Shown piece after piece: positions 27,820 to 50,680 of a DNA stretch of 64,000 nt; the first letter of the stretch is position 1, and every line of letters begins with the position of its first letter. The notes below the pieces were generated by a model. That model searched no databases and was not told the origin of the DNA. It was given only the letters and a program-made list of their open reading frames with translations. Where the stretch lies: the IMG/VR virus record IMGVR_UViG_3300033143_001962, positions 185,798-249,797 of that record; one strand, 5' to 3'. The position numbers were made by a program, and so were the translations under genes.

Positions 27820-27848
27820 ATTATACATTATGTATAACAGTATATCAA
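27820..27848 (-). promoter_or_regulatory. sigma70-type promoter
   Basis: TTGATA-17 nt-TATAAT upstream of the clamp gene. Confidence 0.7.
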
Positions 27849-28807
27849 GTCTTCTGGTTACTTTCTTTAAGAATACACCCTAATGTCTTTCCACCTTTAA
27901 GCGTACTAAGCTCGCCTGGTTTCTTTATACACAACCATGAAACTCGATCATTATATTCTGCTCTTTCTATTTCAAACCCAGTTAATGCACATAATTCGCG
28001 TACAAGTGTGCCCGGTGTAAAACTGTTTAACCCATTTTCAAAATTGATGGCACCGCTTGCATAATCGCAATCGTTATATGTGAATATTAAATAGCCACCT
28101 TCGCGAAGCACTGTAAATGTTTCTTCTAAGTATTGCTTCATAACATCAATTGGTTTATAGTTCATAAAGTTATCCATTACTATTAATCCAATTTGCCCTT
28201 CGGGCAATGAGTTAGATATAAACTCATCTTTATATTCATCAATTAACTTAAAATGAATTGTGTTAAATTCTGCTGTACTTAGATTTTTAAACATATACGG
28301 AACTGCACTACTCTGTTCCATTACATAAAGCACATCACTTGCTTTTAATGCATTAAAGAATCGTAACGAGTTTGGCCTAATGTATACCGATGGGTACTTC
28401 CACGACGTATGCTTTTTAATTAGATCATTAAATGTTGTTCTATTAGCTTCATCAGTGAACAAATCTAAATCCCTGTACTTGTCAATCGTTTCAATATTCG
28501 GCCAGTTACGTTTGGTCTCGTCGTAATGATCTCGGCTTTCAACCAATGGCTCATGTGATTTTTCTTGCATCAATTCAGCTGCTTGTTCTTTAGCTCCAGA
28601 GATTGCACTTTCCATTTCGTACATGTCTTGTGTTAAGTCTCTGATTCTATCGCCTAACGTGCAGAACCAATCACCTAACTCGGTGCCTTCCATTGCTTCC
28701 ATGTTATTATTAATGTCTGAGATAGCACGATCTAATGCGCGTACTTCTTTATCAATATTCCAACTATCAATAGTTGCTTTGTCTGTTAGTAAGTCACTTA
28801 ATTTCAT
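27845..28807 (-). CDS. class I SAM-methyltransferase-like protein with coiled-coil N-terminus
   Basis: IGLIVMDNFMNY...LREGGYLIFTYND; start moved to MKLSDLL (TAATG overlap with polB). Confidence 0.5.
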   Translation of the reverse strand: MKLSDLLTDKATIDSWNIDKEVRALDRAISDINNNMEAMEGTELGDWFCTLGDRIRDLTQDMYEMESAISGAKEQAAELMQEKSHEPLVESRDHYDETKRNWPNIETIDKYRDLDLFTDEANRTTFNDLIKKHTSWKYPSVYIRPNSLRFFNALKASDVLYVMEQSSAVPYMFKNLSTAEFNTIHFKLIDEYKDEFISNSLPEGQIGLIVMDNFMNYKPIDVMKQYLEETFTVLREGGYLIFTYNDCDYASGAINFENGLNSFTPGTLVRELCALTGFEIERAEYNDRVSWLCIKKPGELSTLKGGKTLGCILKESNQKT

Positions 28808-31578
28808 TAGAACTCGAATAAATTTCCAAAAGTACTGCTTGTGTCTGTATGTGCTGCTAAATCCCAATCAAGCACACCTAATAAGTTTTCAATCTTTTGC
28901 GTAACTACAGACTCTTCCATACCTTCTTCGTCAAAGGGTAAGTCCTTAAACCATTGCGGTATATTGTTTTCGTCTGTTGGTCGTGCAACACTTGTATATC
29001 CAAGTGGATTCTCTCTTAACTTACATACAATACACTTTGTACCATCTGAGATAGCAGCGGTGTACTTGTCGTCGTGCATCTTAAGTAACTTATTGTAATT
29101 GTAACCTGCTCGTACGTGTCCAGGTAACCGTGCTTTCTCACCTTTGCTTTGTGCCATGTCTTCTAATGCGCTGTACTTGGTTAAGTTATTAACACGTTTA
29201 GGAGCACCCTTTTCCCAAGGTTCTAAGTCACCGAATGTTGTTTTAAAGTCCATTATTTGCTCAATTACTCTATCCTTACCTTGTTCAGTAAGTGTTGACT
29301 CAAGTATATCCTTTAAGAACTCTTGCACAACTGGTGGAGTATCAGAACGTTTTAAGTCTAAGCCCATAGCTTTAATCTTGCCAGGCTTGCCATCTACGTC
29401 ACAACGTTGTCCTTCATTGTCTACTACCATTAATGCATAACGCTTCTTAGTAATAAACAAACCGTTAACTGCTACAACTTCTCGACCGCACTTAATAAGC
29501 TCGCCGTACTTCTGTGGCGCGTTAAACGCACGTTTCATAAATGGTGGAAAGCTAACATTACATTCGTCTGCTAATCCATCGTACAATGCAATAGCCGAAT
29601 CTACGTTCCATGGCATTTTACCTTTTTCAACTTGGTCTTTAATAACAGGCCATGCACTAAAGTAAGCGGAATCTGTATCGCCGTAAACAATAGTTTCGCC
29701 AGTGTGATCGTACACGCCAGTTAAACATTCATTAACATGTGCGTCCATGTGCTGTGCAATAGCTCGGCCAGTTAATGTAGTACTTTGTCCGATACGCTTA
29801 TCAAAGAATCTACAGTGCTGATTTAATATCGCACCGTACAGTGAGTTAAGATTGATCTTTTTAACAAGCTGTCGCTTATCCCAGTATTCGATCTCTACTT
29901 TGTTTCCTGCTTTGTACGCTTCTTTAAGTTTAGCTTGCATGACTTTACGTTCTGCGTACCAGTGCTTAAGTAGGCCAGGTATAATGCCTTCGCGTTCAAG
30001 TGTAAAGATAGTACCGTTAGCAGTTATTACCCAAGGTAAGCCACTATCAAATATCATCTTATGTACATCGTCTGCTTGCATACGCATACCATCAGCGATA
30101 GCACCGTATGTAACATAACTACCAAATCCAAGTTCGGTTAACTTTTCACTTGCATTTCTATCCCAGTCTATTGTAACTGTAACGTCTGGATCCTTGTCCA
30201 TAACCGCAGTGTATTCTAAGCTGCCGAACATTCCTTCCCAACTTGCTGCAAAGGTTTTACCCTTCTTAGTTTTACGTGTTTTAGGATTAACTTGATCGGC
30301 CATTTGTGACGCAATGTGCTCATCTGTCATTATAGGACGTAATTGTCCCATGATAGTTTCAGGAGCCATGTTCAATGATTGAATAGCACTTGGATACAGT
30401 GAGTTAATATCAACACTGCCTATCCACTTGTGTATACCTTTCTTAGGATATGCTACGTATGCGCCTGCTGCTTGTGTGTTATCATCATCACTGTAACGTA
30501 TCTTGTCAGGAACAATAAAGCCTTGCTTGTGTGCTTCGTTTATAATAGCTTGTTCTGTTTGTGCTACTGCGCCCATTGTCTTAGGAAGTAGAACAGTGTT
30601 TTCATGTGCAACTGAATTCGCTAAGTCAATGAACTTAAGTTTAACGTCAAGCTTATGTAACAACAAAGTATCTTGTATGTTGTACTCGATGAACTTTTTA
30701 AAGTCATAATTGTATAAGTGATCAAGTGTGCCTTTATACGCAACCTTAGTTTCGTTAAGTTCGTACTCGCCAATTGCATCTAAGCTGTAGCTATGCATTT
30801 CGTGATACGTGTACTTTCTGTATAGTTGCATGTAATCTAAATGCACACGACCAAACAAATCGTATGTTGTATTTTCAGCACCAAATCGTTCAAATGTACG
30901 CTTCTTAGGAAGCTTATCCCATAAGCAGAAACGTCTGGTGTCATTTTTACTTAGCACTCTTGTTATTCTATTAACCATGTACGGAATATCGTAGCCTTCA
31001 CTGTTCCATCCGCTTAGTATATCAGCATCTTCTATAACATCGAGCCAGTCTTTGAACATTTCCTTTTCATCTGTATATAATATACAGTTATCAAAGTGTG
31101 CTACAATAGCTTTAGCTTGCTCGTTAGATAATGTGTCTGGAGCGATTACTTGCGTAACCATTGTCTTAGACCAATTAAGATACGTTGAGATAGCTGTTAC
31201 TTTATTAAACGGATCATCTGTAGGTGAGAAACCTTTCACCTTATCGAAGTCTACCTCGATATCGAAGAACGCTGTATGCAACTCAGGAAACTCTGCACCA
31301 CCGTAGTTCTTTTCGAGACATCGTTGCAAGGGAGTGAAGTCACTTTCAAATAACTTCGTGCCACTGTGCATACGTTTCTCTTTCTGGAACTCTTTATTAG
31401 ACCGTGTGGTGAATTTACTAACTGGTGTATCGTAAACAGTCCTGTACTTGCCGCCTCTATCTTCGAAATAGAATGTGTGGTCTGCCGGGTAATCGACAAA
31501 GATACGTTTACCATGTACACGTTCTACTACGTGTACTGTATCTTTGTCCTTGTTGTAGAATGCATCTACAAAACTCAT
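28807..31578 (-). CDS. family B DNA polymerase with 3'-5' exonuclease
   Basis: FDIEVD, GWNSEGYDIPY, DINSLYPS, KINLNSLYG, YGDTDS, KKRY; uninterrupted, no intein. Confidence 0.97.
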   Translation of the reverse strand: MSFVDAFYNKDKDTVHVVERVHGKRIFVDYPADHTFYFEDRGGKYRTVYDTPVSKFTTRSNKEFQKEKRMHSGTKLFESDFTPLQRCLEKNYGGAEFPELHTAFFDIEVDFDKVKGFSPTDDPFNKVTAISTYLNWSKTMVTQVIAPDTLSNEQAKAIVAHFDNCILYTDEKEMFKDWLDVIEDADILSGWNSEGYDIPYMVNRITRVLSKNDTRRFCLWDKLPKKRTFERFGAENTTYDLFGRVHLDYMQLYRKYTYHEMHSYSLDAIGEYELNETKVAYKGTLDHLYNYDFKKFIEYNIQDTLLLHKLDVKLKFIDLANSVAHENTVLLPKTMGAVAQTEQAIINEAHKQGFIVPDKIRYSDDDNTQAAGAYVAYPKKGIHKWIGSVDINSLYPSAIQSLNMAPETIMGQLRPIMTDEHIASQMADQVNPKTRKTKKGKTFAASWEGMFGSLEYTAVMDKDPDVTVTIDWDRNASEKLTELGFGSYVTYGAIADGMRMQADDVHKMIFDSGLPWVITANGTIFTLEREGIIPGLLKHWYAERKVMQAKLKEAYKAGNKVEIEYWDKRQLVKKINLNSLYGAILNQHCRFFDKRIGQSTTLTGRAIAQHMDAHVNECLTGVYDHTGETIVYGDTDSAYFSAWPVIKDQVEKGKMPWNVDSAIALYDGLADECNVSFPPFMKRAFNAPQKYGELIKCGREVVAVNGLFITKKRYALMVVDNEGQRCDVDGKPGKIKAMGLDLKRSDTPPVVQEFLKDILESTLTEQGKDRVIEQIMDFKTTFGDLEPWEKGAPKRVNNLTKYSALEDMAQSKGEKARLPGHVRAGYNYNKLLKMHDDKYTAAISDGTKCIVCKLRENPLGYTSVARPTDENNIPQWFKDLPFDEEGMEESVVTQKIENLLGVLDWDLAAHTDTSSTFGNLFEF

Positions 31579-31866: not shown

Positions 31867-31895
31867 ATTATAGCTTATTACTTAGGCTTTGTCAA
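31867..31895 (-). promoter_or_regulatory. consensus sigma70 promoter driving dsbA-polB
   Basis: perfect TTGACA-17 nt-TATAAT. Confidence 0.85.
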
Positions 31896-31904
31896 CAAGA
31901 AGTC

Positions 31905-31930
31905 AAAAAAATAGACACCGAAGTGTCTAC
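31905..31930 (-). terminator. Rho-independent terminator ending the late cluster
   Basis: TAGACAC-TTCG-GTGTCTA hairpin followed by a T-run. Confidence 0.85.
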
Positions 31931-31952
31931 TAAACTATGGTTTTGGAAAACT

Positions 31953-32288
31953 TTATGTTAGTGTAATGCCTTTACCTTGAGCGGCCGCTTTAATCTTTTG
32001 CTTTAGGATTGCGATGTGTTTTGCACTAGCCCCTTGCTTTGCAAGTTTAGAAATGTGATTCCATTGCGCAATTAATTTTTCTTTTTCAGCTTTGTCAGTA
32101 TGTGCTTTACGTTGCTCTATGCCGACGCCACTGTCTGTTGTTTTGCCTTTACCTACAAATGACTTGTCTGACTTAAAGTCCATTGGATCCATCTCATTAA
32201 TCATTGTCATAATGGATTCAAAAAGTCTATCAGCTTTACTGTTTAACTGTGCTTCTGTAAGTGGTTGGTATAATTCAAATAATCTCAT
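31953..32288 (-). CDS. putative internal head protein
   Basis: N-terminus MRLFELYQPLTEA. Confidence 0.55.
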   Translation of the reverse strand: MRLFELYQPLTEAQLNSKADRLFESIMTMINEMDPMDFKSDKSFVGKGKTTDSGVGIEQRKAHTDKAEKEKLIAQWNHISKLAKQGASAKHIAILKQKIKAAAQGKGITLT

Positions 32289-33481
32289 TTTATTTCGCCT
32301 GGCGGTGTTAATTTAATTCCACGTTTTCTTGCAAGTTCAACTAACTTACTGACTTGTTCTATTGTATCCATATCATCAAGTGCATCACCTGATTTAATGT
32401 CGAGGATTAATTGTCTCCAAGTTGCGTTTATACGTTTATTTAGCTGTTCTTCTGTACCTTCTGGCATAGTTTCCAATAACGACATCATACTGTTAATTGA
32501 CTCTGCCATTGGGTTAGCTATCATTTCAATTCCCCAACCTTCACGTTGGAATTCATGGAACTCTTTAGCTGATTCAAACTTACCACTTGGGTAAATTGCA
32601 AACTTACGGTTACCTAATATGCCAAAGTACGCAACTTCATCACCGCGTACTAGTTTAGTCTTATTATATAAATTTCCGCCTTTTTCGATAAGCTCGTCCA
32701 TTGTTTCATGTTGTGCTGGTGTTGGACCTGTTGGCGCAGCTTCTGTTACTGCGTCTTCTGGCATGTACTTTGCAAAGTCTCTATGCCCGCGACGTCTAAG
32801 TTCACGGTCGATCATTTTAATTTGGAATGCTCTCGGAGTTCCTCCTCCGCCTGCTTGATGACTGTCGATACCTTGTCCAGCTAATGCTTTTAATTCATCA
32901 TCGTCCATTTTATTAATTCGTGCCATCATATCTTTCGGAGTAAGGTAGCCGTCCCACCAAAACATTTTATTAAACTTACGTCCTAAGCTATCACCACGTG
33001 CTTCATCAATACCTTCGCCGAACCATTGTTCTGGATTTTCTAATGCTTGTATAGTATCGCTTGCTAATTCGTCCATGTCACCGTCTAGAGTTAGGACTTT
33101 TTGCATAATGTCAGCTACGTATTCGTCACCGTACTGGCTAAAAATGTCTGGGTTAATTGCTAACAACTTTTGTGTTAATAATTCCATACCGTTATTAGTA
33201 TCGTAAGTATCTTCACCTAAGGACATAGCCTTACCGGATTCAAGTGCATCTAACCGTGCAACAATGTTGCCTAAGTCAAACTCTTGATCTTTATTAACTT
33301 CTGCATTAATGTCGATTTCGCTGTCGTGACCTGCATCCATATCACGTGACAGTGATGCTACTGCACCTAAGTCATCGTCGACTGATCCTTTGTATCTCGA
33401 TCTGGCTTGTTTAATAGCCATTGCCGTACCTGCATCTCTTGTTTTTATATCTGTCTTTTCAAATAATTGAAATAGTTTCAT
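32285..33481 (-). CDS. modular putative internal head protein
   Basis: MKLFQLFEK; modules separated by LGED, IDEA, VTEA, MAES. Confidence 0.55.
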   Translation of the reverse strand: MKLFQLFEKTDIKTRDAGTAMAIKQARSRYKGSVDDDLGAVASLSRDMDAGHDSEIDINAEVNKDQEFDLGNIVARLDALESGKAMSLGEDTYDTNNGMELLTQKLLAINPDIFSQYGDEYVADIMQKVLTLDGDMDELASDTIQALENPEQWFGEGIDEARGDSLGRKFNKMFWWDGYLTPKDMMARINKMDDDELKALAGQGIDSHQAGGGGTPRAFQIKMIDRELRRRGHRDFAKYMPEDAVTEAAPTGPTPAQHETMDELIEKGGNLYNKTKLVRGDEVAYFGILGNRKFAIYPSGKFESAKEFHEFQREGWGIEMIANPMAESINSMMSLLETMPEGTEEQLNKRINATWRQLILDIKSGDALDDMDTIEQVSKLVELARKRGIKLTPPGEIK

Positions 33482-34302
33482 TACTTAAATCCTTTGTCTC
33501 TGTACTGTTGTACAGTGTTTTTAGTGCTAGAGCGAACTGCTTCTACTGCGCTGATAACTTTATTTGCAAATGCAATAAATGTCTCACCATCGTTTGTTCT
33601 AAACTCTTCGTCTACTTCGTCAATATTCCCACCGAAGTATGCAAGGTTTTTAATCTGTGCCATTAATTCTTGTATACTAAGCATACGACTACTTTCAGAT
33701 AAATTAGATTTACCATTGTCGCCTTTAGTTAATTCTTTGTTAGTTATTTCGTCATGTAGCTCACGCTTAAAACGTGTCTCCATGTTCTCGTGTTCTTCGT
33801 CCATTGACTTAAATATATCTGCAAAGGATTGTTTCTGATTCATTGCTTGCTTTGGTGCTAATTTTGGGCTTAGTTGTTCTTCTACAGCGCCTTCGTGTAG
33901 TTCGCCTACCCCGTCGCATCTGCTGCACTCTTCGCCACTGTGGGTAAAACCGTTGCCTTGGCAAGATGGGCATTCTGTTGTAGCTGGTTCAAATGATTGT
34001 TTACTTTTCTTTTTATTCTTTTGTACGTCAGCCCAAGTAGTAACTAAGTCACCTTCTTCTAAATCCACTTCATCATCAAACTCACCGCCAACTAAGTACT
34101 TACTTGCAGGGTGTTTTGTTTTTGTATTCTTAGCCATTTTATGTTGTGCTGGCATTCGATTAACACTTTTTTGTTGTGAGTCTAACCCTTCTAACAATAT
34201 TTTCATAGCATCTTTTTCTACTGCAGCGTTGATAATAACAGGATTCTCTTGTCCTGCGCCTGCAAAATTCTTAAGTATGTTTGTCATGTTGTCGTCTATC
34301 AT
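33481..34302 (-). CDS. modular late protein with zinc finger
   Basis: CPSCQGNG...CSRCDGVG; LLEG, LEEG, LHEG, LSES linkers. Confidence 0.55.
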   Translation of the reverse strand: MIDDNMTNILKNFAGAGQENPVIINAAVEKDAMKILLEGLDSQQKSVNRMPAQHKMAKNTKTKHPASKYLVGGEFDDEVDLEEGDLVTTWADVQKNKKKSKQSFEPATTECPSCQGNGFTHSGEECSRCDGVGELHEGAVEEQLSPKLAPKQAMNQKQSFADIFKSMDEEHENMETRFKRELHDEITNKELTKGDNGKSNLSESSRMLSIQELMAQIKNLAYFGGNIDEVDEEFRTNDGETFIAFANKVISAVEAVRSSTKNTVQQYRDKGFK

Positions 34303-34727
34303 TAGTCTAAATCCTTGCTATTCTTATATTTACCGGATTTTTTCTTCTTCTTCTTCTTTTTTGCAGGGTTGCCATAAATTGATGCATTGCGAGTTAATGT
34401 AGACCCCATGCCTGTTGCTACTGTTGCAACACACCCTGCTGTAGTTGTTTCATTTAGGTTAGCTTGCTGGAACTTACGTCTGGATTTTTCAAACCTGAGT
34501 CCGTCACCTTTACCACCTTTGTACGCTGTACCAACACCTTTGTAATCGCTCCATGTACCTTTAAGTCTGGTGCCACCTGCGTCTACTGCGTAAATTAAAT
34601 CTGTGTTAAATTCTTTCTCATTGACAAATTCCACGGCTCCCATTGATCGCATATCTTCTATCCAATCGCCCTTAACTGTGTACTCTATGCCTTCTATTAA
34701 AAAATCACTTGCTCTCATAAATCTCAA
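34302..34727 (-). CDS. putative internal head protein with Lys-rich tail
   Basis: MRASDFLIEG...LNETTTAG...KKKKKKKK. Confidence 0.55.
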   Translation of the reverse strand: MRFMRASDFLIEGIEYTVKGDWIEDMRSMGAVEFVNEKEFNTDLIYAVDAGGTRLKGTWSDYKGVGTAYKGGKGDGLRFEKSRRKFQQANLNETTTAGCVATVATGMGSTLTRNASIYGNPAKKKKKKKKSGKYKNSKDLD

Positions 34728-34998
34728 ACCTATTGTTATCTAGTACTTCTGCGTTACCAATTAATACTGTTGGTGCGCTTATATCAAATGTGCCAGTAAA
34801 TGGAGATAGCTGGTCAACCCGTATTGTATATATCCCTGGCACCGCTTCTATCTGTAATACTTCTTTAATAAATGTATCGTTGCGCCATTTAAATGTACGC
34901 TCTGCAAACATTTCGTCGTTTACGTACACTCTGTAGTCTGGTGGAAATCCTTCCCAATCACAACGTACTTCAAAATTAACTTTAATAAACTGCTCCAT
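34705..34998 (-). CDS. small beta-rich late protein
   Basis: start moved to MEQFIK, directly after TAAATA at 35004-35009. Confidence 0.55.
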   Translation of the reverse strand: MEQFIKVNFEVRCDWEGFPPDYRVYVNDEMFAERTFKWRNDTFIKEVLQIEAVPGIYTIRVDQLSPFTGTFDISAPTVLIGNAEVLDNNRFEIYESK

Positions 34999-35006
34999 AG
35001 CAGTAT

Positions 35007-35606
35007 TTATCCGTATATCCAATCTCCGACCATTTTGTACTTAATGTTAAATGCATTCATTAATAACTGCATTTCTTTTAAGCATTCGTGCTGCCCACCA
35101 CCACCTAGCAATGATCCACTAAGTGCTTTTAAATCACCTATGCTAATTTCAGGGAGGTAAATTCCATCATCGTACATCCAAGAGCCACCGTCGTCTCCGA
35201 CAAGCTTCTGGAATATTTCTACTCCGTTTTCTTGTTGTTCGATTATATCTCTGCTGTCGTTCATATCGTTCATAACCATATAACGCACTACTCTTATAAT
35301 AGTACTGTTATCAACACCTTGATCCATCCAGCCACGTAACCATGCATAACTCTTTTCTTTGTACGTAATGCTTTGTGCTATATCTTCATCTAACCCGTAC
35401 TCTACAAAATGTTCTGCAACTTCGTACGCTGTATCTTCTATACCTACATCTTCGCCATTGAAGAATGCTGTAATGTTAGGGTTCTTTTCGTTTAAGTAAT
35501 GCATACATCGTTCAATTGCATCTCTGTATCCGAACTGATCAGAGTCGTATGCTGGTTGAAAATCAACTAAAATTACACTATTGCCTCTTGCTTCAATTAG
35601 TTTCAT
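35007..35606 (-). CDS. isochorismatase/nicotinamidase-like cysteine hydrolase
   Basis: ILVDFQP, EKSY, GGGQHECLKE (D-K-C triad pattern); N-terminus MKLIEA. Confidence 0.55.
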   Translation of the reverse strand: MKLIEARGNSVILVDFQPAYDSDQFGYRDAIERCMHYLNEKNPNITAFFNGEDVGIEDTAYEVAEHFVEYGLDEDIAQSITYKEKSYAWLRGWMDQGVDNSTIIRVVRYMVMNDMNDSRDIIEQQENGVEIFQKLVGDDGGSWMYDDGIYLPEISIGDLKALSGSLLGGGGQHECLKEMQLLMNAFNIKYKMVGDWIYG

Positions 35607-36487
35607 TATTTTCCGGCAGCGTCATTCATTGCGTTTTTAAGTATATCCATTTTAAGCTCTTGTACTTCGTCGTAATACTCTCTACCGTACTCTAATAATG
35701 CTTTAGCTAGTTTGGCTCTTGCCGCAGGCTCTTCTTTAAGTAATCGTTCAAGTTCACGTGCATTGTTAGGAACACTTGCCCAACCGTGATGCAATGTACC
35801 GTACGTGTTTAAGAATCTATCCATTGTTTTTCTGTTAAATCCTTCTTCAGCAACTTCTTCGATTGTTTCTGCTGCTTCAAGTGCTAGTTCCCTTGCACTT
35901 TGCGTACCACGTGTAAACGATGGGTTGCGTCCGTACTTGTCATAGCCTCGTGGTATTTCACGTAAGCCTGCGTAAATAGCATCTGCCATTTTATTTAACT
36001 TGTCTTGTATTTTTGGTAAGAATGTTTTATCCATGTACTCGTAAATATCATAATCACTGACAACACCAACTTCTTCTCTGTCCCTGACACTTGCGACATC
36101 ACTTGCTGGTTTGTCGCCTCTGTACTCATGGAATGTATTAAGGAAGTAAAACTTTCCGTTGCCTTTTTTAGCACCAAATCGTTTCTTAGCATCGGAGAAT
36201 TTTTGTTCAGTGCTTTCTTTAACCTTGTCGGTCTTTGGATCGTATGTCCAAACTGTCCAGCCGGAACCGCCCCACTTACCTTTACGTATTGCATAAGCTG
36301 TCCCATCGTTGTTAACACGGAAAATTATACCGTGTTCCATATCTTTCATGTTAAGCTTTGTAACTTCTTTTGGCGTGTCTTTATGCCCGATAGTGTACTC
36401 TTTAGCAACTCTCGCAGCAAGCTTCTTCGGAACACCCACTGATTCCAGCCCTGGTGTTGCTTCTATTAAAAATTCTGTTGCTTTCAT
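35606..36487 (-). CDS. putative internal head protein
   Basis: MKATEFLIEA. Confidence 0.55.
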   Translation of the reverse strand: MKATEFLIEATPGLESVGVPKKLAARVAKEYTIGHKDTPKEVTKLNMKDMEHGIIFRVNNDGTAYAIRKGKWGGSGWTVWTYDPKTDKVKESTEQKFSDAKKRFGAKKGNGKFYFLNTFHEYRGDKPASDVASVRDREEVGVVSDYDIYEYMDKTFLPKIQDKLNKMADAIYAGLREIPRGYDKYGRNPSFTRGTQSARELALEAAETIEEVAEEGFNRKTMDRFLNTYGTLHHGWASVPNNARELERLLKEEPAARAKLAKALLEYGREYYDEVQELKMDILKNAMNDAAGK

Positions 36488-39400
36488 ACGTAATGTCCTA
36501 TATCCATGTATAAATTTTTAAATGCCGCTCTCGCTGCACTCTTCGGGGCTCCTGTTCTGCCCATTTCGATTTCCATTGCTTCCATCCAACGCATTTCACA
36601 TTGCATATCAAGTATAGCATGTCTGTCTGCTAACATTTCTATTGCCTCGCGTTCGTTCTTAGGACTAGGTATTTGTACCTCGCCTGGCTTTCCAGTGTCG
36701 ACTGCTTCACCTGCTTCTGCTGCCGCTCTTGCTTCTGCACGTTTTGCCGCAGCTTTCTTTAAGTTTACTATAAGTTGATCTTTAGTAATCATACCTGCGT
36801 TAAATGCTGCAAACAATGTCATTGCTGTTTTATCATTTGCTCGTTTATGTGTTGGCAAGTTAGTTGCCATCTTATAAAGCTTCTTAGCGTATTCTTTCTT
36901 ATGTGCTTCTGGATCTGCTGCCACTGCATACGCAACAACAAATCTGTTAATCGAATGGGTAATAGCTTCTATATCGTGTATATAATCTGCACCGCCGGCT
37001 GCTCGAAACTCTATTCTATCAGCTTTAATGCCTACTGAACTGAACTTACCAAAATCAACGTTCTCAAATGAACTCATTAAGCTGTGACTTAAGTTGTTTT
37101 TCATCTTACCCATCATGTCTGCATAGCCTTTAGCTTTTGCAGGGCGATCTTTTTCATAACCTTGTGTGCTATCAATGAAGTCAGTTAACTTAGCCAGTGA
37201 GTTTACAGCAAATTCGCTGTACTCACGACCAAACTCTCTTGCGACTTTATTATCGCCGACCATTAATACTAACTTAGCGTAATCTAGTTTACTGTGATCT
37301 ATGTTCTTCATGCTTACGTTAACATGTAAGCCTGTAGACTCATTTGCGTACCCGCCATTTTGTTTAAGGAACTGCACTATATCTTCTACGTCAGCGATAC
37401 CTTCTTCGTATTCTGTAGGAGGCATAATAATTTCCATGCCTGCATCATCATCGTCGTTAGGCTTAACAGAACTGTCTGGCATTATTATCCAATCTTCTGA
37501 TGCTACTGCTAAATCATCAGCATCATCTCCAGGTTCGCCTTCGTTTTCTTCAACGGTACGTACTTCAACAGTGTGCCCTAATTGTTGTTCCATTTTACTA
37601 GCCATATTATGCGCTGCTTCTTCGTCGAAGCTTCCATTGCTATAATCACCAGTAAAGAAACTATGCTCACTGTATAATCTGCCATCGTACTCTCTACCAA
37701 TTTCTTTAAAAGATCTAATAGTGTCTTTAATGAACCAACTACCTAAACTATATGCTGAATCATCCGGGTATGCGCTTTCCCAGAAGTCTGCTTGTACTAA
37801 CTCTCTTAGAGGCTGTACTGCTTCATCTGCATCTTCTATAAATATTTCATAGTACAATGATAGGTACGGGTTTGTACCTATTTGTGGCGTTGGCCAACTA
37901 CCAACCGCTCCTATTTCTTTATACGCTTCCTGTGATTTAGATATAACTAATTTTGCCATTTCTTCAGTAAGTTCAATGTCATCATCGTCGCCTGTAATTC
38001 TAATTATAATGTCGTCCATGTCACCTGTCGTCGTCATGTTAACCATAGCTTCAACCTTTTCATCATCGTTATAATACGGTACATTAATAATATGTTTTAA
38101 TTGATCCTCAACCCATTCAGGCTCTTTCTCGGCACTAATCCATTCCATGTGCTCTTGTTCCATTTCTACCCAGACTTCATCATCGTCGCTGTTGTCGAAG
38201 TAGTCTTGTAAGTCTCTTAAAGATGTTTCATCTGTCACCTTAGGGTTACTGTCATCATCGGATGCTACGCATACTTCAAACTCTAATCCTATAACCGGAC
38301 GGGCTGTTTGTACTATTTTGTTTACTTGTTTTCGGAGGCCACCCGGTGTCATATCCAGTTCAAATAATGCACCTTCCATTATGTTTGATACTGTCTTGTA
38401 ACTACCGTTTGATTTAAGTAAAGGGGGAATGCCACCTTTATCTACTGTAAGGCCTAACTTGGCTGCTTCACGTTTAGTACTGTTCTCATCAACGTCTGCT
38501 GTCGTGTTAACACCTTTAACTATAATGCCTACACCTTCATTGACGCCTTTATCATTCCAACGTGTGAGGAATTCACCTTCGTCATCTACTACATCGAACG
38601 TAGCTTGCCCTGGTCTAATAAATTCCTTAGGACGTGGGTATTTGCTAAGTTTAAGTTTTGATAGTTTAATTACTTTTTCTAAAATGCCCGGATCAATATC
38701 TGCAAAATCCTTTATTAAATCAGGTTCATTGGCAAATGCTATAACCTTGACTTCGTCAGTTGGGTTATTGATATTATTAAACACAAAGGCAACACCAACA
38801 CTAACTTCGCTACCTAGCTGGATTGCTTTAAGTTGTATCTCTGGATCTGGGTTTTTAATGTATTTAATGTTCTGCAAGCCGCCATCTCTCAATACAACAG
38901 ACTGCAATTCTTTAGATGGATTGTCTATGTACTTTAAATTCCACGGACTTGTGTGTACAGCATCATACAACTCGGAGTCTGATGGATTGTCCATCAATGG
39001 AACCATGCCGTGTCGTGTTGCGTACTTATTGAGTACTTTCTTTATCTGAGGATAGGTGTCTACTAGCTCTTTCATTTCTTCTGGCGTTAACTCTTGATCT
39101 CGTGCGTTCATGTACGAGTTGCTTTGGAAATGGAATTGGAACTTACCTAGCTTTTTGGTTTGTATAATCCAAAGCGGACCTTGTTGATGATAATGCTCAA
39201 AATAATTGTCGCCGCCGTAGCTTGCTGCTGTACACCACTTAGTGCCTTTACCAAAGAAACAACTTGCTTCTTCAGTAGCTGGTACTACTATCTCAACATC
39301 TTTATCCTTGTACATTAATTCAGCTGCGGAGCTATCCAGGAACGCTTTCTTTTCTCTGCGGTCAGCTTCTCTATTTGATACTGTATCTTTTTCTTCAAAC

Positions 39401-40788
39401 GGTTCCAGCACATTGTATAAATCATCCAACGATAATCTGTTTAAGTCTCTGTGCTCTGGTGGTAGTTTTGATTTAACTTTTGCGAACTTCATTAGCTCTT
39501 GTTTAATTTGTCCGATATCTTCTAGCTTGTACTCGCCAGCTATGTATCGATTTGCTAACCACTGTATTGCTTTTGTGCTTGCTACTGCGAGCTTATTGAT
39601 TATTTCTAATGCGGTAACTTCAGTATGTGTATTACCAGTTTCTTCTTCGTAACGTGCAATTAACTTATCATTTAATTGATCTGCTACGTGCTGTGCTCTG
39701 TCTTCGTCAAGCATTTCGCCTTCGTGGAATTCATCACCGACTAAGTCAACACCAGTAAACCTTTGTATCATTTCCCAAGCTTCTTTATGCTTGCGTAATG
39801 CTAACAAGTTTCTAAATTGATCTATAAGTCCTTGGTTAGCTTCTTTGTAAAATTTCATTACTTCCATAGCACCTAAGTTGCCGCTGTACGCTGCTTCCAT
39901 TGTTGCTATATCAGATGCTTGTTCGTGCAATGAATCGTAGTCGTAATCATCAAACAGTGTATCTGCACCGCTGTATAATTCTTTTATGATATCTTCTGCT
40001 GTGCGACCACTTTCACCGTAGTTGTTAAAGTCTGCTGCGAGCTCTTGCTCTAAGTCTGTATCTACTTCGTCGTTCACGTGTTCTAAACTTAAATGTTCAT
40101 CTTCAAAGCTGCGTCTCTTATCCCATAGCTTATCAAAGTATCCATCTTTACGTAACATCTTAAATGCTAAGTTCTCTGGACCAAACTCACCGTTCTCACT
40201 TAGTCCTGCTTTTCTATAACGTTTTACAATGTCAAGCACATCATCAAGGTATTGTCTATTGTCGGTTGCGAGTGCTCTAATTGCAAGTTGCTTTAACTTA
40301 TTGTATTTGAAGTAACTTGCTTCTTCATCTACGTTTGCACGTTGCTTAGTTGGAAAACGGTTCCATTCGTTATTGAAAACACTATAGTTTCCTAAGCTCA
40401 CATGCGGTTGCGCTGCATCTTGTACATACAGTTCAACATCGTACCCCTTGATCTTAATATCGTGCTGATCATTATATTGGTACTTTTTAGAATCAAATAA
40501 CTCTCTGTATACTTCGTTGTCTGGTAGTTGAGAGAAGTCAACGATTAAATGCAAGTCAACGTCTGAGTGAGGCGTGTAACTATATGCTGCATTAGACCCG
40601 CTTAAAGTAATATCAACTAAAGACGTAAGTTCAACGCCGAGAAATTCACGAAAATGATCAGCTATACCAATCAAGGACTGATGAACCTCAGGACGCATCA
40701 CTTCATCTACGAAGAGTTGCGGATTAAGATCATTATTGAAATTAATTGCTTTTGTTATTTGAAACTTGTCAAGTTCTTCTAAATTCAT
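36484..40788 (-). CDS. 1434-aa multidomain protein: Pol-beta-superfamily nucleotidyltransferase, WCT module, short repeats, putative amidoligase
   Basis: LSGSNAAYSYTPHSDVDLH; GTKWCTAA; YIDNPS/YIKNPD repeats; IGLEFEV, PDSSV, GMEIIMP, STGLHVNVS, IEFRAAGG. Confidence 0.75.
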   Translation of the reverse strand: MNLEELDKFQITKAINFNNDLNPQLFVDEVMRPEVHQSLIGIADHFREFLGVELTSLVDITLSGSNAAYSYTPHSDVDLHLIVDFSQLPDNEVYRELFDSKKYQYNDQHDIKIKGYDVELYVQDAAQPHVSLGNYSVFNNEWNRFPTKQRANVDEEASYFKYNKLKQLAIRALATDNRQYLDDVLDIVKRYRKAGLSENGEFGPENLAFKMLRKDGYFDKLWDKRRSFEDEHLSLEHVNDEVDTDLEQELAADFNNYGESGRTAEDIIKELYSGADTLFDDYDYDSLHEQASDIATMEAAYSGNLGAMEVMKFYKEANQGLIDQFRNLLALRKHKEAWEMIQRFTGVDLVGDEFHEGEMLDEDRAQHVADQLNDKLIARYEEETGNTHTEVTALEIINKLAVASTKAIQWLANRYIAGEYKLEDIGQIKQELMKFAKVKSKLPPEHRDLNRLSLDDLYNVLEPFEEKDTVSNREADRREKKAFLDSSAAELMYKDKDVEIVVPATEEASCFFGKGTKWCTAASYGGDNYFEHYHQQGPLWIIQTKKLGKFQFHFQSNSYMNARDQELTPEEMKELVDTYPQIKKVLNKYATRHGMVPLMDNPSDSELYDAVHTSPWNLKYIDNPSKELQSVVLRDGGLQNIKYIKNPDPEIQLKAIQLGSEVSVGVAFVFNNINNPTDEVKVIAFANEPDLIKDFADIDPGILEKVIKLSKLKLSKYPRPKEFIRPGQATFDVVDDEGEFLTRWNDKGVNEGVGIIVKGVNTTADVDENSTKREAAKLGLTVDKGGIPPLLKSNGSYKTVSNIMEGALFELDMTPGGLRKQVNKIVQTARPVIGLEFEVCVASDDDSNPKVTDETSLRDLQDYFDNSDDDEVWVEMEQEHMEWISAEKEPEWVEDQLKHIINVPYYNDDEKVEAMVNMTTTGDMDDIIIRITGDDDDIELTEEMAKLVISKSQEAYKEIGAVGSWPTPQIGTNPYLSLYYEIFIEDADEAVQPLRELVQADFWESAYPDDSAYSLGSWFIKDTIRSFKEIGREYDGRLYSEHSFFTGDYSNGSFDEEAAHNMASKMEQQLGHTVEVRTVEENEGEPGDDADDLAVASEDWIIMPDSSVKPNDDDDAGMEIIMPPTEYEEGIADVEDIVQFLKQNGGYANESTGLHVNVSMKNIDHSKLDYAKLVLMVGDNKVAREFGREYSEFAVNSLAKLTDFIDSTQGYEKDRPAKAKGYADMMGKMKNNLSHSLMSSFENVDFGKFSSVGIKADRIEFRAAGGADYIHDIEAITHSINRFVVAYAVAADPEAHKKEYAKKLYKMATNLPTHKRANDKTAMTLFAAFNAGMITKDQLIVNLKKAAAKRAEARAAAEAGEAVDTGKPGEVQIPSPKNEREAIEMLADRHAILDMQCEMRWMEAMEIEMGRTGAPKSAARAAFKNLYMDIGHYV

Positions 40789-40793
40789 ATCTG

Positions 40794-40799
40794 TATTTA
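40794..40799 (-). promoter_or_regulatory. late promoter core (TAAATA)
   Basis: ATAAATA 5 nt upstream of the 40788 start. Confidence 0.65.
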
Positions 40800-40826
40800 T
40801 GCCTAACTAGACACTGTACAGAAATG

Positions 40827-41492
40827 TTATAGTCGGAAGTTGTTTATGAATTCGTTAAATTCGCGGATTAGTGATTCAGTTTGTACAACGCCTAAGCGTT
40901 TGTCAAACAATTTTTTAAGAGTTGCAGTTGGTTTCTTATCGTACATATCTGCTAATATTTGTGTACGCTGTTCATCGCTTGCATTTGCATACATATCGCG
41001 TATCTCTGTTGCACCTGTAATAGCTTGTCCTGCTATTGTAAATTCAACTGTCGGAGTTACTTCTACGTATATATGGCCATTAGCTACCGGTTGTGGGTTG
41101 TCTGTTAACCATTGTATAGCTGCTCTACTACCGTCTTTCTTAAGTGCAAAACCTTCTGCATCTTTAGTTTTACCGATTAAACGGTCACCATCTTTTCTGC
41201 TTAGTGCTACAATTAGAACAGTGTTCTTTTCATTGAATGGAAGTACTGCTTGTATTAAGTCTTTATTGTAAACACTTTTAGGTGCGATGAATTTGTCTAC
41301 TGGAATGCCCATCATCTTAGCAATTTTTTGTTTCTCTTTCCAAGCAAATGGATCTTTAGGACCTGTTGGTTTATCCGCAGATGCTACATACACCGCACCA
41401 TTGCCGAACTTACTTACAAGTGCATCGTAAGAAGCTTTGTGGCCTTTATGCATTGGTTGGAATCGTCCACCATAAATTACTATTGTTTTCAT
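40827..41492 (-). CDS. HIGH-motif cytidylyl/adenylyltransferase-like protein
   Basis: IYGGRFQPMHKGH, DPFAWKEK, GATEIR; TAAATA at 41498-41503. Confidence 0.8.
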   Translation of the reverse strand: MKTIVIYGGRFQPMHKGHKASYDALVSKFGNGAVYVASADKPTGPKDPFAWKEKQKIAKMMGIPVDKFIAPKSVYNKDLIQAVLPFNEKNTVLIVALSRKDGDRLIGKTKDAEGFALKKDGSRAAIQWLTDNPQPVANGHIYVEVTPTVEFTIAGQAITGATEIRDMYANASDEQRTQILADMYDKKPTATLKKLFDKRLGVVQTESLIREFNEFINNFRL

Positions 41493-41496
41493 AGTA

Positions 41497-41799
41497 CTAT
41501 TTATTCGGTTCGAATGGTATTACTTCGGCTTCTTGTGTTGTGTCTAAATCATTAAAGCGATCAAGCTCACTGTAGAACATTTCAACAAGTGCATTAAAAC
41601 GTACAATAGGATCTTTGTACTTTTGCAACTCTCTGTCCATGCGCCATACTGCTTTGCGACAGCGTTCTGCTCCGCACTCAGTTACACACATGTCTTGTAT
41701 TTTTTGTTCGAGGATTTCGATACGTTTTTCGTGAAACGCATCCTCATTTGTTTGATATAGTTTTACTAAGTCTGTATACAGTTCGTTAAAATTGCACAC
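41497..41799 (-). CDS. hypothetical protein (TAG stop)
   Basis: ORF track. Confidence 0.5.
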   Translation of the reverse strand: MCNFNELYTDLVKLYQTNEDAFHEKRIEILEQKIQDMCVTECGAERCRKAVWRMDRELQKYKDPIVRFNALVEMFYSELDRFNDLDTTQEAEVIPFEPNK

Positions 41800-42169: not shown

Positions 42170-42823
42170 TTATTTATCACTAATTATCGTGTATATTTTA
42201 CTTGTTACGCCCGGGGCCATTAAATCTAGTACCACCTGCATCTTTGCATCATTAACATCAATGAAAAAATGTGTTTCTGTATGCTGCCACCAATATTTAC
42301 CAAATGCCCATCTTAGCAAAGACCCGCTCGAGCGTACATCAGCGTCATACGACGTTAAAAATTTAGCAATATTCTCACGCACATCCTTTCCACATTTAAC
42401 ATGCCTAAATGGAATGCGGTACTTGTACTCTGAGTTTTTCCTGTATATTGTTCCTGGCTCGCATGTAACACTAGCTTCTGTAATAACACCAGTTTTATCA
42501 AAAGCTAGTAACTCATGAATAGTATCTATGTTATTTGTGTACGCTATTGTTGTATTACGAGATGCAGCAAATCGCATATCTTCACTCTGCACTATGTAAT
42601 CATGTAAGTTGCATAAGTTATCAAGCAATAGTGCTAATCCCTCAGGAGCACGGTTGTGTATGTGATATTTTTCAGCCCGCGTACATATTCTCTCATGTGA
42701 CACCGGACGGTGCTTGGCCCCGCGTATAACCGAGGAGCCTGGCACACTTAATCTTACACTGTACTTGTACTTGTTAAAGAATAACTTATCAGTACTCTTA
42801 AGCTTTAGGTTTAAATTGGTCAA
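42170..42823 (-). CDS. hypothetical protein
   Basis: 217-aa ORF; KLFFNKYKYSVRL. Confidence 0.6.
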   Translation of the reverse strand: MTNLNLKLKSTDKLFFNKYKYSVRLSVPGSSVIRGAKHRPVSHERICTRAEKYHIHNRAPEGLALLLDNLCNLHDYIVQSEDMRFAASRNTTIAYTNNIDTIHELLAFDKTGVITEASVTCEPGTIYRKNSEYKYRIPFRHVKCGKDVRENIAKFLTSYDADVRSSGSLLRWAFGKYWWQHTETHFFIDVNDAKMQVVLDLMAPGVTSKIYTIISDK

Positions 42824-50672: not shown

Positions 50673-50680
50673 TATAAATA
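50673..50680 (+). promoter_or_regulatory. T4 late promoter consensus TATAAATA
   Basis: exact match immediately upstream of the plus-strand methyltransferase. Confidence 0.65.

What the first reader, a model, noticed from the sequence alone, without database searches (positions are those of the whole stretch)
31953..41492. Cluster of putative capsid-packaged, protease-processed cargo proteins with T4-CTS-like N-termini
Seen: consecutive late genes begin MRLFELYQPLTEA, MKLFQLFEK, MRASDFLIEG, MKLIEA, MKATEFLIEA and MNLEEL, and their internal modules are separated by [LIVM]-x-E-[AGDS] linkers (LGED, IDEA, VTEA, LLEG, LHEG, LSES, LNET, VNEG, IMEG). Known: T4 internal proteins carry a roughly 10-aa capsid-targeting sequence (MKTYQEFIAE) and the prohead protease gp21 cuts after [IL]-x-E. 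Inference: about 9.5 kb encodes ejected polyproteins cut into many small effectors delivered with the DNA, that is an injected host-takeover/anti-defence payload.
Basis: partly seen in the sequence, partly recalled or inferred. Interest (0 to 1): 0.72.

Follow-up and report, generated by a model that had tools for sequence, protein, structure and literature searches.

The report
Capsid-address tags on phage cargo genes
An uncultured giant phage with a T4-type head-maturation protease carries at least a dozen unrelated genes that begin with a short tag very like the phage T4 signal that loads proteins into the capsid, so they are probably proteins packed into the head and delivered with the DNA, though no virion data exist to prove it.

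Summary
The N-termini are real and non-random. A strict form of the tag (M-[KR]-[AST]-x-[DE]-F-[ILMV]-x-E) occurs 7 times in the 250-kb contig, always at an ORF start. It occurs 0 times in reversed or codon-shuffled sequence. The tagged proteins are not paralogues.

The contig encodes a T4 gp21-type (Peptidase_S77) prohead protease, a gp23-type capsid protein and a scaffold enriched in [LIV]xE. Syntenic relatives keep the tags. Orthologues change tag length but keep the E|[AGST] junction.

A basic peptide module (208 clusters) is bounded by [LIV]xE wherever it sits in a protein. Tagged proteins elsewhere in the contig include a T7 gp0.7-like kinase and a ParB-like protein.

The 1434-aa protein is a nucleotidyltransferase + amidoligase multidomain ("polyvalent") protein. 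Three of its four h-x-E-[AGST] motifs lie at module junctions.

Not supported:
- Linker motifs are not enriched overall, and four of the nine listed are poorly conserved.
- MNLEEL is the conserved start of the nucleotidyltransferase domain, not a separate tag.
- Packaging, cleavage and ejection are inferred only.

Verdict: T4-like capsid-targeted cargo, partly supported; a new variant of a known kind.

The parts
40794..40800 (-). Late-type promoter motif ATAAATA, 5 nt before the ATG of the 1434-aa gene
   Evidence: The 7-mer is 9x enriched in upstream intergenic regions of the contig. It also precedes head and tail genes. A gp55-like late sigma factor is encoded in the contig.
36484..40788 (-). 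1434-aa multidomain ('polyvalent') protein. Nucleotidyltransferase domain aa 1-237 (nt 40078-40788). Inserted module aa 358-752 (nt 38533-39717) holding a PA5oct gp205-like domain plus repeats. C-terminal part aa 753-1434 with Amidoligase_2 (hit aa 1065-1165, nt 37294-37596). Junction motifs: FHEG aa 354 (nt 39718-39729), VNEG aa 749 (nt 38533-38544), IMEG aa 803 (nt 38371-38382).
   Evidence: Pfam Amidoligase_2 at 39.3 bits against a cut-off of 22. PHROG hits. AF2 model pLDDT 79.7, with Foldseek matches to aminoglycoside adenylyltransferases and CD-NTases. GS...DxD motif at aa 64. 438 homologous giant proteins. Insert boundaries from the alignment with relatives. PA5oct gp205 match at 39% identity.
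35606..36487 (-). 293-aa orphan protein with tag MKATEFLIEA|TPG (tag nt 36458-36487)
   Evidence: The orthologue P0004 starts MDLLKELLLEA|TPG, and a truncated orthologue also keeps TPG. No family or structure match.
35007..35606 (-). 199-aa protein with short tag MKLIEA|RGN. Conserved motifs LVDFQPAY and GGGGxHECL.
   Evidence: Orthologues begin MKANEFMIEA|RRD, MKIILNE|SRQ, MKLVEA|RGN and MKPQEFITEA|RSD. Tag length varies but the junction is fixed. The AF2 model is poor (pLDDT 48.6).
34705..34998 (-). 97-aa conserved protein without a tag. It has its own ATAAATA-N5-ATG promoter motif at 35004-35010.
34302..34718 (-). 138-aa protein: tag MRASDFLIEG, an ~80-aa domain, then the internal site LNE|T (aa 88-90, nt 34449-34457), then a basic peptide (aa 91-138, nt 34305-34448) that ends in a poly-Lys run.
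   Evidence: In relatives the peptide is a separate 49-56-aa gene product whose tag ends exactly at [IL]xE|TT. The family has 208 clusters. Internal copies are preceded by [LIV]xE in 11 of 12 cases.
33481..34302 (-). 273-aa protein with conserved N-terminus MIDDNMTNILKNF, invariant LLEG|LD at aa 36 (nt 34186-34197), a CxxCxGxG zinc-ribbon-like motif at aa 111, and NLSE at aa 200.
   Evidence: In the called proteins of the contig, LLEGLD otherwise occurs only in the capsid-protein propeptide.
32285..33481 (-). 398-aa orphan protein with class-B N-terminus MKLFQLFEK
   Evidence: Orthologues start MKLFEMFDK, MKLFQIFET and MKLFELFEK. The listed internal linkers are not conserved. No family match.
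31953..32288 (-). 111-aa basic protein with class-B N-terminus MRLFELYQPLTEA
31910..31931 (-). Intrinsic terminator that closes the cluster's transcription unit
   Evidence: 9-bp stem followed by a T-run
31867..31895 (-). Perfect sigma-70 promoter (TTGACA-17-TATAAT) for the DsbA-like and DNA polymerase genes. It marks the boundary with the replication module.
   Evidence: 12 of 12 consensus matches
40827..41492 (-). 221-aa cytidylyltransferase/NMNAT-like protein.
   Evidence: Pfam CTP_transf_like. NCBIfam NMN adenylyltransferase-like hits, all below their cut-offs.

Best explanation
The cluster (window 31953-40788, minus strand) encodes cargo proteins of the phage head.

Most cluster proteins carry a short N-terminal address tag. 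The main form is M-[KR]-x-x-[DE]-F-[IL]-x-E-[AG]. Shorter forms are M-[KR]-[LI]-x-E. A second class is MKLFxLFxK.

Proposed mechanism, by analogy with the T4 capsid-targeting sequence:
1. The tag docks the protein onto the gp22-like scaffold core while the prohead assembles.
2. Once the shell is closed, the phage's gp21-type (Peptidase_S77) protease cuts after Glu in [LIV]-x-E|[AGST]. This removes the tags, excises a conserved basic peptide of about 45 aa, cuts the giant nucleotidyltransferase-amidoligase protein at a few module junctions, and degrades the scaffold.
3. The mature proteins stay in the head with the DNA and enter the cell with it. The enzymes would then act before any phage gene is expressed. 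These enzymes are the nucleotidyltransferase-amidoligase protein and, at other loci of the same contig, a T7 gp0.7-like kinase and a ParB-like protein.

Shown here: the tags, their non-random occurrence, their conservation and fixed junctions in relatives, and the presence of the protease, scaffold and capsid genes.

Inferred: targeting, cleavage, retention in the head, ejection, and any host-takeover or anti-defence role.
For: 1. Tag statistics and lack of paralogy: 7 strict matches, all at ORF starts, against 0 in controls.
2. Likeness to T4. ipII and ipIII start MKTYQEFIAE, the published CTS (PMC8442874). T4 alt, annotated as present in the capsid and entering with the DNA, starts MELITELF and resembles class B.
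3. T4-type head machinery in the same contig:
- Peptidase_S77 at 87.6 bits.
- Pfam Gp23 capsid protein, matched from residue 54, with LLEG, LLEG and LAE|S in the preceding propeptide.
- A scaffold with 20 [LIV]xE against 10.1 expected (z 3.9).
4. Comparative evidence:
- Syntenic relatives keep the tags.
- Orthologues of the 199-aa and 293-aa proteins vary the tag but keep the E|A/S junction.
- In the peptide family (208 clusters), the residue three before the cut (P3) is I/V/L in all 123 tags that the extraction pattern ([FILVMT] at P3) recovered. Internal copies are preceded by [LIV]xE in 11 of 12 cases. 39 members have a second YANS[ILV]xE|[SGA] site.
5. Tagged proteins elsewhere in the contig form a second run of four genes: a kinase (phrog_15752), a ParB-like protein, a KOW-like protein and an orphan. 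Three more tagged genes lie at other positions. The kinase tag MRIDE is invariant in 10 orthologues. Kinases, ParB nucleases and Pol-beta nucleotidyltransferases are typical domains of proteins predicted to be injected (PMC5512222).
6. The giant protein belongs to a family of 438 or more proteins. Some members are fused to lytic transglycosylase, GH19, LysM or peptidase domains. One of its modules is homologous to PA5oct gp205, a virion protein by ESI-MS/MS that starts MKLFEVF. Its h-x-E-G motifs sit at the insert boundaries.
7. DUF5661 occurs both as a tagged stand-alone gene (L006, L031) and as a domain fused into homologues of the giant protein.
8. A late-type promoter motif and a separate terminator define the unit.
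Against: - No proteomic or genetic data exist. The lineage is uncultured, and no isolated phage has these genes or the tag.
- The cluster sits next to replication genes, about 200 kb from the head module in the contig. Read-through from an upstream sigma-70-like promoter at 45283 cannot be excluded.
- Class-B N-termini lack a clean E|small-residue site.
- FHEG and VNEG have F and V, not L or I, three residues before the cut.
- The giant protein has no distinct tag.
- LxE density is not enriched overall.
- The mature parts have no recognisable function.
- Stand-alone homologues of the nucleotidyltransferase domain sit beside DNA polymerase in T4-like cyanophages. That context also fits a cytoplasmic role.
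Confidence: 0.62

Rival explanations
1. The tagged proteins are propeptide-bearing components of the prohead core (extra scaffold or 'inner body' material, or DNA counter-ions). The protease processes them, but they have no effector role after ejection.
For: Several are basic or end in poly-Lys runs. Most have no enzymatic signature. LLEGLD is shared with the capsid-protein propeptide. T4 internal proteins are also abundant DNA-associated proteins (PMC3012670).
Against: The tagged set includes a kinase and a ParB-like protein. The giant protein has nucleotidyltransferase and amidoligase domains. Enzymes are not expected for purely structural filler.
Confidence: 0.15
2. The 1434-aa nucleotidyltransferase-amidoligase protein is a cytoplasmic enzyme of the replication or DNA-modification module, for example base hypermodification or nucleotide metabolism. 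It is not packaged, and its h-x-E-G motifs are ordinary linker sequence. (This confidence applies to the 1434-aa protein alone; it is not exclusive with tag-directed packaging of the other proteins.)
For: It lies between NMNAT-like and DsbA/DNA polymerase genes. Stand-alone nucleotidyltransferase homologues sit next to DNA polymerase, the clamp loader and regA in cyanophages. Radical SAM genes are interleaved in relatives. It has no separate tag. From my own knowledge, glutamine-synthetase-like amidoligases have been predicted to act in phage base hypermodification; this was not checked here.
Against: Homologues are fused to lytic transglycosylase, GH19, LysM and peptidase domains. The PA5oct homologue of one module is a virion protein. 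DUF5661 is exchanged between the giant-protein family and tagged small genes. Three of its four h-x-E-[AGST] motifs fall at module junctions. It has a late-type promoter motif.
Confidence: 0.2
3. The N-terminal tag is a recognition signal for a cytoplasmic system rather than for the capsid. One candidate is the phage's ClpA/B-like ATPase and DnaJ, which are always encoded just upstream; the tag might act as an unfolding or degradation tag.
For: DnaJ plus a Clp ATPase are syntenic with the cargo cluster in the window and in loci L031, L033 and L045.
Against: The tag matches a known capsid-targeting sequence that works in T4, whose head-assembly components as reviewed include no Clp ATPase. The fixed [LIV]xE|small junction, also seen at internal positions, fits a Glu-specific protease rather than an unfoldase tag. 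Tagged genes also occur at other loci far from the Clp gene.
Confidence: 0.07
4. The shared N-termini reflect a constraint on the mRNA or on translation initiation (A/U-rich 5' coding ends of genes without a Shine-Dalgarno site, or of leaderless late genes), or they arise by chance.
For: Many tagged genes lack a clear Shine-Dalgarno sequence. One (contig position 143857) has ATAAATA-N5-ATG.
Against: Conservation is at the amino-acid level with synonymous codon changes. Controls give 0 matches. The same [LIV]xE boundary appears when the peptide module is internal.
Confidence: 0.03

Closest known systems
Phage T4 internal proteins IPI/IPII/IPIII and their capsid-targeting sequence (CTS)
   Same: Both have a tag of about 10 residues with the same pattern (T4 MKTYQEFIAE|A; here MKATEFLIE|A and MRASDFLIE|G). 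Both put the tag on otherwise unrelated, fast-evolving proteins. Both phages have a gp21-family protease, gp22-like scaffold and gp23 capsid protein. Some of the cargo is basic in both (PMC3012670; PMC9958956).
   Different: The phage is a distant, uncultured jumbo phage; its DNA polymerase is at most 44% identical to any isolate. There are at least 12 tagged genes rather than 3-4, including a multidomain giant protein's neighbours, a kinase and a ParB-like protein. The tag is one residue shorter and comes in several classes. No mature part is homologous to a T4 internal protein. Nothing has been tested experimentally.
Phage T4 Alt (packaged, injected ADP-ribosyltransferase)
   Same: It is an enzyme carried in the head and injected. 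Its N-terminus MELITELF resembles the class-B starts MKLFELF and MRLFELY.
   Different: No ADP-ribosyltransferase domain was found here. Class-B cleavage sites are unclear.
Polyvalent proteins of phages and conjugative elements (Iyer et al. 2017, PMC5512222)
   Same: One polypeptide combines disparate enzymatic domains. Pol-beta nucleotidyltransferases are among the listed domain types. The class is predicted to be packaged and injected, sometimes after proteolytic processing. Homologues here add lytic transglycosylase, GH19, LysM and peptidase domains.
   Different: The amidoligase term did not occur in that paper. Processing here would be by the prohead protease at h-x-E-G sites rather than by a built-in peptidase. 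The gene is not next to head genes.
Ejection/inner-body proteins of phiKZ-like giant phages (phiKZ, 201phi2-1, SPN3US)
   Same: Many head-internal proteins are processed after Glu by a gp21-related protease and then ejected (PMC5694885).
   Different: Their propeptides are mostly 100 or more residues long and their cleavage motifs are A/S/G-x-E. Here the tags are 5-10 residues long and the residue three before the cut is I/L/V, as in T4.
Pseudomonas phage PA5oct gp205 (structural protein by ESI-MS/MS)
   Same: It is 39% identical over 226 residues to aa 360-585 of the 1434-aa protein, and it starts MKLFEVF.
   Different: It is a stand-alone 482-aa protein. No other PA5oct gene carries either tag class.

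Membership tests
T4-type CTS-bearing internal head proteins | N-terminal tag of about 10 residues resembling MKTYQEFIAE | tested here: met
   MKATEFLIEA and MRASDFLIEG in the window. MRAKDFIAEG, MRATEFIVEG and MKSSEFITEG elsewhere in the contig. 7 strict matches against 0 in controls. T4 sequences read from the T4 record.
T4-type CTS-bearing internal head proteins | Tag ends at a gp21-type site: hydrophobic residue, any residue, Glu, then a small residue | tested here: met
   Met for class A and the short tags, and the junction is conserved in orthologues. Not met for class B (MKLFQLFEK), where no E|small site is conserved.
T4-type CTS-bearing internal head proteins | Same genome encodes a gp21-family protease, a scaffold core and a gp23-type capsid protein | tested here: met
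   Peptidase_S77 at 87.6 bits against a cut-off of 27. Pfam Gp23 at 321 bits. The scaffold matches phrog_10922 and has a [LIV]xE excess of z 3.9.
T4-type CTS-bearing internal head proteins | Protein present in purified virions in the cleaved form | not testable with these tools
   The lineage is uncultured, and no isolate has homologues.
T4-type CTS-bearing internal head proteins | Tag sufficient to load a foreign protein into the capsid | not testable with these tools
   This needs an experiment. The fold of protease plus tag peptide gave no verdict.
T4-type CTS-bearing internal head proteins | Homology of the mature part to T4 IPI/II/III | tested here: not met
   No Pfam, PHROG or NCBIfam match for the mature parts. 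T-even internal proteins themselves share only the CTS (PMC3012670), so this feature weighs little.
Polyvalent proteins (Iyer et al. 2017) | Two or more domains of disparate biochemical activity in one polypeptide | tested here: met
   Nucleotidyltransferase fold, Amidoligase_2, a gp205-like module and repeats.
Polyvalent proteins (Iyer et al. 2017) | Context or evidence indicating packaging into the virion | tested here: inconclusive
   The gene is not adjacent to head genes. However, it has a late-type promoter motif, homologues carry cell-wall hydrolase fusions, and the PA5oct homologue of one module is a virion protein.
Pfam Amidoligase_2 (PF12224) | Score above the curated gathering threshold | tested here: met
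   39.3 bits against 22, over aa 1065-1165. The precomputed Pfam hit is shared by most homologues. Catalytic residues were not examined.
Pol-beta superfamily nucleotidyltransferases | GS...DxD motif and the two-domain nucleotidyltransferase fold | tested here: met
   G64, S65, D76 and D78 are invariant in 41 homologues. Foldseek probability is 0.95-0.99 to AadA/AAD(9) and CdnE, but TM-scores are low at 0.19-0.29. No subfamily could be assigned.

The most novel reading that the evidence does not exclude
A large uncultured clade of T4-related jumbo phages uses a modular set of short N-terminal address tags, read by a gp21-type protease, to load a broad and fast-changing arsenal into the head. 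The arsenal includes a protein kinase, a ParB-like nuclease and a nucleotidyltransferase-amidoligase giant protein. It also includes an undescribed excised peptide of about 45 residues (Gly/Ala/Thr-rich core plus a poly-Lys tail; more than 200 sequence clusters). That peptide could be a new class of DNA-condensing, shell-binding or membrane-active ejection peptide.
Probability: 0.3. Interest if true: 0.8.

Novelty: new variant of a known kind. Interest (0 to 1): 0.64.

Why it matters
If confirmed, this extends T4's capsid-targeting mechanism far beyond the T-even phages. In the comparisons made here it is documented for T4, and the reviews read describe it for the T-even phages. The tag then becomes a simple sequence rule for predicting which genes of uncultured giant phages encode injected proteins. 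Such proteins are the first phage molecules a cell meets and are prime candidates for anti-defence functions. It would also provide natural packaging tags for loading foreign proteins into other phage capsids. Finally, it points to a widespread unstudied peptide family and to a set of enzymes (kinase, ParB-like protein, nucleotidyltransferase-amidoligase) that may act before any phage gene is expressed.

Tried and rejected
- Megablast of the region against isolated phages: no match.
- tblastn of the 398-aa protein, the 199-aa protein and a peptide-module protein against isolated phages: no match.
- Pfam, PHROG and NCBIfam scans: nothing for most cargo proteins.
- PDB sequence search with the 1434-aa protein: no hit.
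- ESM Atlas look-ups of the 293-aa and 398-aa proteins: only low-confidence models and no usable relatives.
- AF2 of the 199-aa protein with 5 orthologues: pLDDT 48.6, so it was not used for fold search. An isochorismatase-like reading of its LVDFQ/HEC motifs stays a guess.
- Fold of the S77 protease with the first 45 residues of the 293-aa protein: no verdict (score 0.00), which is evidence neither for nor against binding.
- The exact T4 late promoter TATAAATA is not enriched in the window (5 found against 7.9 expected). The shorter ATAAATA is enriched upstream of genes.
- Neither tag class is widespread in PA5oct; only gp205 has one.
- The class-A tag is absent from Atu_ph07, Vibrio phage 2.275.O, Phosso and fEgEco12, with one loose hit in XaC1. 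The nearest cultured relatives therefore cannot serve as models.
- Paralogy as the source of the shared N-termini: rejected.
- Overall LxE enrichment as evidence for polyproteins: rejected.
- MNLEEL as a distinct tag: rejected as such, because it is the conserved domain start. Its M-x-[IL]-x-E form does not exclude a minimal tag. The AF2 model leaves residues 1-6 unstructured.
It was repeated without that row.

Full report
**Setting.** The window is bases 185798-249797 of a 249.8-kb IMG/VR viral contig judged about 72% complete. Nearly all genes lie on the minus strand. The DNA polymerase at 28807-31578 is T4-type. Its best matches among isolates are jumbo phages (Atu_ph07, Phosso, Vibrio phage 2.275.O, XaC1, Rak2-like coliphages) at only 40-44% identity. 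The region itself has no nucleotide match among isolated phages. This is therefore an uncultured jumbo phage distantly related to T4-like viruses.

**Head and late-transcription machinery.** The contig encodes:
- A gp21-family prohead protease (Peptidase_S77, 87.6 bits against a cut-off of 27).
- A gp23-type major capsid protein. The Pfam Gp23 match starts at residue 54, and the preceding propeptide contains LLEG twice and LAE|S.
- A scaffold-like coiled-coil protein with twice the expected number of [LIV]xE motifs (20 against 10.1, z 3.9).
- A portal protein (read from the sequence and its position beside the head genes; no family scan was run on it).
- A gp55-like late sigma factor.

**The observation.** The eight genes from 40788 down to 31953 are tightly packed or overlapping.
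- Genome-wide, 11% of called genes have [LI]xE in their first 14 residues. In the cluster, 5-6 of 8 do.
- Scanning the six-frame translation for M[KR][AST]x[DE]F[ILMV]xE gives 7 matches, all at the start of long ORFs. The reversed sequence gives none, and 20 codon shuffles give none. The looser form without the final xE matches no internal methionine out of 1793.
- The proteins are not paralogues.
- The codons differ synonymously and the upstream DNA is unrelated.

The shared N-terminus is therefore a protein-level tag placed on unrelated proteins.

Tagged genes occur elsewhere in the contig.
- A run of four consecutive genes at contig 166.7-169.2 kb: MRIDELNPQ (a T7 gp0.7-like protein kinase, phrog_15752), MRANEFMNLYKK (ParB-like), MRSKEFLKED (KOW-like) and MRATEFIVEG (an orphan).
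- Three further genes: MRAKDFIAEG (143857), MKSKDFLGEN (176753) and MKSSEFITEG (177333).
- The kinase start MRIDE is invariant in ten orthologues of 44-77% identity.

**Comparison with T4.** Reading the T4 record shows that ipII and ipIII both begin MKTYQEFIAE. This is the published capsid-targeting sequence, which is removed by a single cleavage (PMC8442874). In T4, gp21 trims small N-terminal peptides from IPI-III and Alt and degrades the scaffold (PMC9958956; PMC5694885). MKATEFLIE|A and MRASDFLIE|G differ from the T4 tag mainly by one missing residue. T4 alt is annotated as present in the capsid and entering with the DNA. It starts MELITELF, which resembles the second class here (MKLFQLFEK, MRLFELYQP).

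**Related sequences.**
- Loci fetched through the DNA polymerase and through homologues of the giant protein share the gene order DnaJ, ClpA/B-like ATPase, cytidylyltransferase-like gene, giant protein, small genes, DsbA-like gene, DNA polymerase. They carry the same kinds of N-termini.
- Orthologues of the 199-aa protein begin MKLIEA|RGN, MKANEFMIEA|RRD, MKIILNE|SRQ, MKLVEA|RGN and MKPQEFITEA|RSD. The tag changes length, but the junction after Glu and the following sequence are fixed.
- The 293-aa protein's orthologue starts MDLLKELLLEA|TPG against MKATEFLIEA|TPG.
- The C-terminal 48 residues of the 138-aa protein are, in relatives, a separate gene of 49-56 codons. Its tag ends exactly at [IL]xE|TT(S/T)AGG. 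In the window a domain of about 80 residues has been inserted between the tag and a retained LNE|T junction.

**The peptide module.**
- A profile search of 1.84 billion representative proteins found 208 clusters carrying it.
- A pattern that required a hydrophobic residue ([FILVMT]) three before the cut recovered the N-terminal tag in 123 of the 150 listed hits. In these the tag is 9 residues long in 98 cases, that residue (P3) is I, V or L in all of them, and T, S or M follows the cut in 116.
- Where the module is internal or C-terminal, it is preceded by [LIV]xE in 11 of 12 cases.
- 39 members have a second site, YANS[ILV]xE|[SGA], after it.
- This is the pattern expected of a peptide cut out by a Glu-specific protease that prefers a hydrophobic residue at P3.
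- The module has no match in PHROGs, isolated phages or the searched literature.

**The 1434-aa protein.**
- Its first 237 residues form a Pol-beta-type nucleotidyltransferase. G64, S65, D76 and D78 are invariant. The AF2 model has pLDDT 79.7. Foldseek gives probability 0.95-0.99 to aminoglycoside adenylyltransferases and CD-NTases, though TM-scores are low.
- The C-terminal part contains Amidoligase_2.
- At least 438 proteins of 800-2300 residues share this frame with variable middles. Some carry lytic transglycosylase, GH19, LysM, M48 or U49 peptidase, or DUF5661 domains, and many are on contigs of 200-370 kb. This fits the class of 'polyvalent proteins' predicted to be packaged and injected (PMC5512222).
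- Compared with its closest relatives, the window's protein has a 390-residue insert (aa 358-752). Part of the insert is 39% identical to PA5oct gp205, a virion protein by mass spectrometry.
- The protein has only four [LIVMF]xE[AGST] motifs. Two (FHEG 354, VNEG 749) sit at the insert boundaries. A third (IMEG 803) is conserved as [ILF]xE[GS] in homologues, as is xEG|VGIIVKG. Overall the protein is depleted in [LI]xE. Such depletion would suit a protein that must survive in a protease-filled prohead, but the effect is modest.
- MNLEEL is not a separate tag. M-[DN]-[IL]-x-E-L is the conserved start of the domain in all homologues.

**Other linkers.** In the 273-aa protein, LLEG|LD is invariant in five orthologues. 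Among the contig's called proteins, LLEGLD otherwise occurs only in the capsid-protein propeptide. L[SA]E at residue 200 is kept in 4 of 5 orthologues. LHEG is only partly kept. In the 398-aa protein, LGED, IDEA and VTEA are not conserved beyond the nearest relative. The picture of many small effectors cut from polyproteins is therefore supported for a few defined sites, not in general.

**Transcription.**
- The exact T4 late promoter TATAAATA is not enriched.
- ATAAATA is 9-fold enriched upstream of genes. It precedes head and tail genes and sits 5 nt before the ATG of the 1434-aa gene and of the 97-aa gene.
- A terminator (31931-31910) followed by a perfect sigma-70 promoter (31895-31867) separates the cluster from the DsbA-like and polymerase genes.
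- Late expression is thus plausible. Read-through from a sigma-70-like promoter at 45283 is not excluded.

**Conclusion.** The best reading is a T4-like system of capsid-targeted cargo that is trimmed by the prohead protease, here expanded to a dozen or more proteins and several tag classes. I put this at about 0.6.
- Targeting, cleavage, retention, ejection and function are all inferred by analogy and from sequence conservation.
- Main alternatives for individual members: a purely structural role in the core; a cytoplasmic DNA- or nucleotide-modifying role for the giant protein; or a link to the neighbouring ClpA/B-DnaJ genes.
- The tag is absent from the nearest cultured relatives. The system is therefore lineage-specific and currently has no experimental model.

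Noticed in passing
window 35004-35010, 40794-40800, 41498-41504, 42171-42177 (minus strand); 50674-50680 (plus strand): ATAAATA sits exactly 5 nt before the ATG of about 14 genes in the contig, and these genes lack a Shine-Dalgarno sequence. With T4 late-promoter geometry the transcript would start at the A of the ATG, which suggests leaderless late mRNAs.
   Followed up: partly
window 42798-46263; also L031, L033, L045: A ClpA/B-like two-AAA ATPase (768 aa) and a DnaJ-like gene are always encoded just upstream of the cargo cluster in this phage group. The reason is unknown.
   Followed up: partly
L044:167-331 (T4 record 18966-19130): T4 gene 61.1, a 54-codon hypothetical gene next to the primase gene, begins MKTFKEFIKE. 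This is very like the ipII/ipIII capsid-targeting sequence.
   Followed up: no
L004:1221-1397: A related phage contig encodes a ribosomal protein L33 homologue directly after the orthologue of the 293-aa cargo protein.
   Followed up: no
L038:2380-3264 (contig 142379-143263): A 294-aa protein with a typical signal peptide and a porin-like, beta-rich sequence lies just downstream of a tagged gene. This rests on reading the sequence only.
   Followed up: no
L029:6343-8331 (contig 171342-173330): A 662-aa protein with membrane segments and GGDEF and EAL motifs (a cyclic-di-GMP turnover type) is encoded by the phage. It is preceded by ATAAATA-N5-ATG. This rests on reading the sequence only.
   Followed up: no
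L030:6335-8554; L031:14815-15702: In relatives, a NUMOD3 homing-endonuclease-like gene and a radical SAM gene on the opposite strand interrupt the cargo cluster. Both are absent from the window.
   Followed up: no
window 27845-28807: The 320-aa gene just downstream of the DNA polymerase starts MKLSDLLTDK, a partial match to the tag pattern.
   Followed up: no
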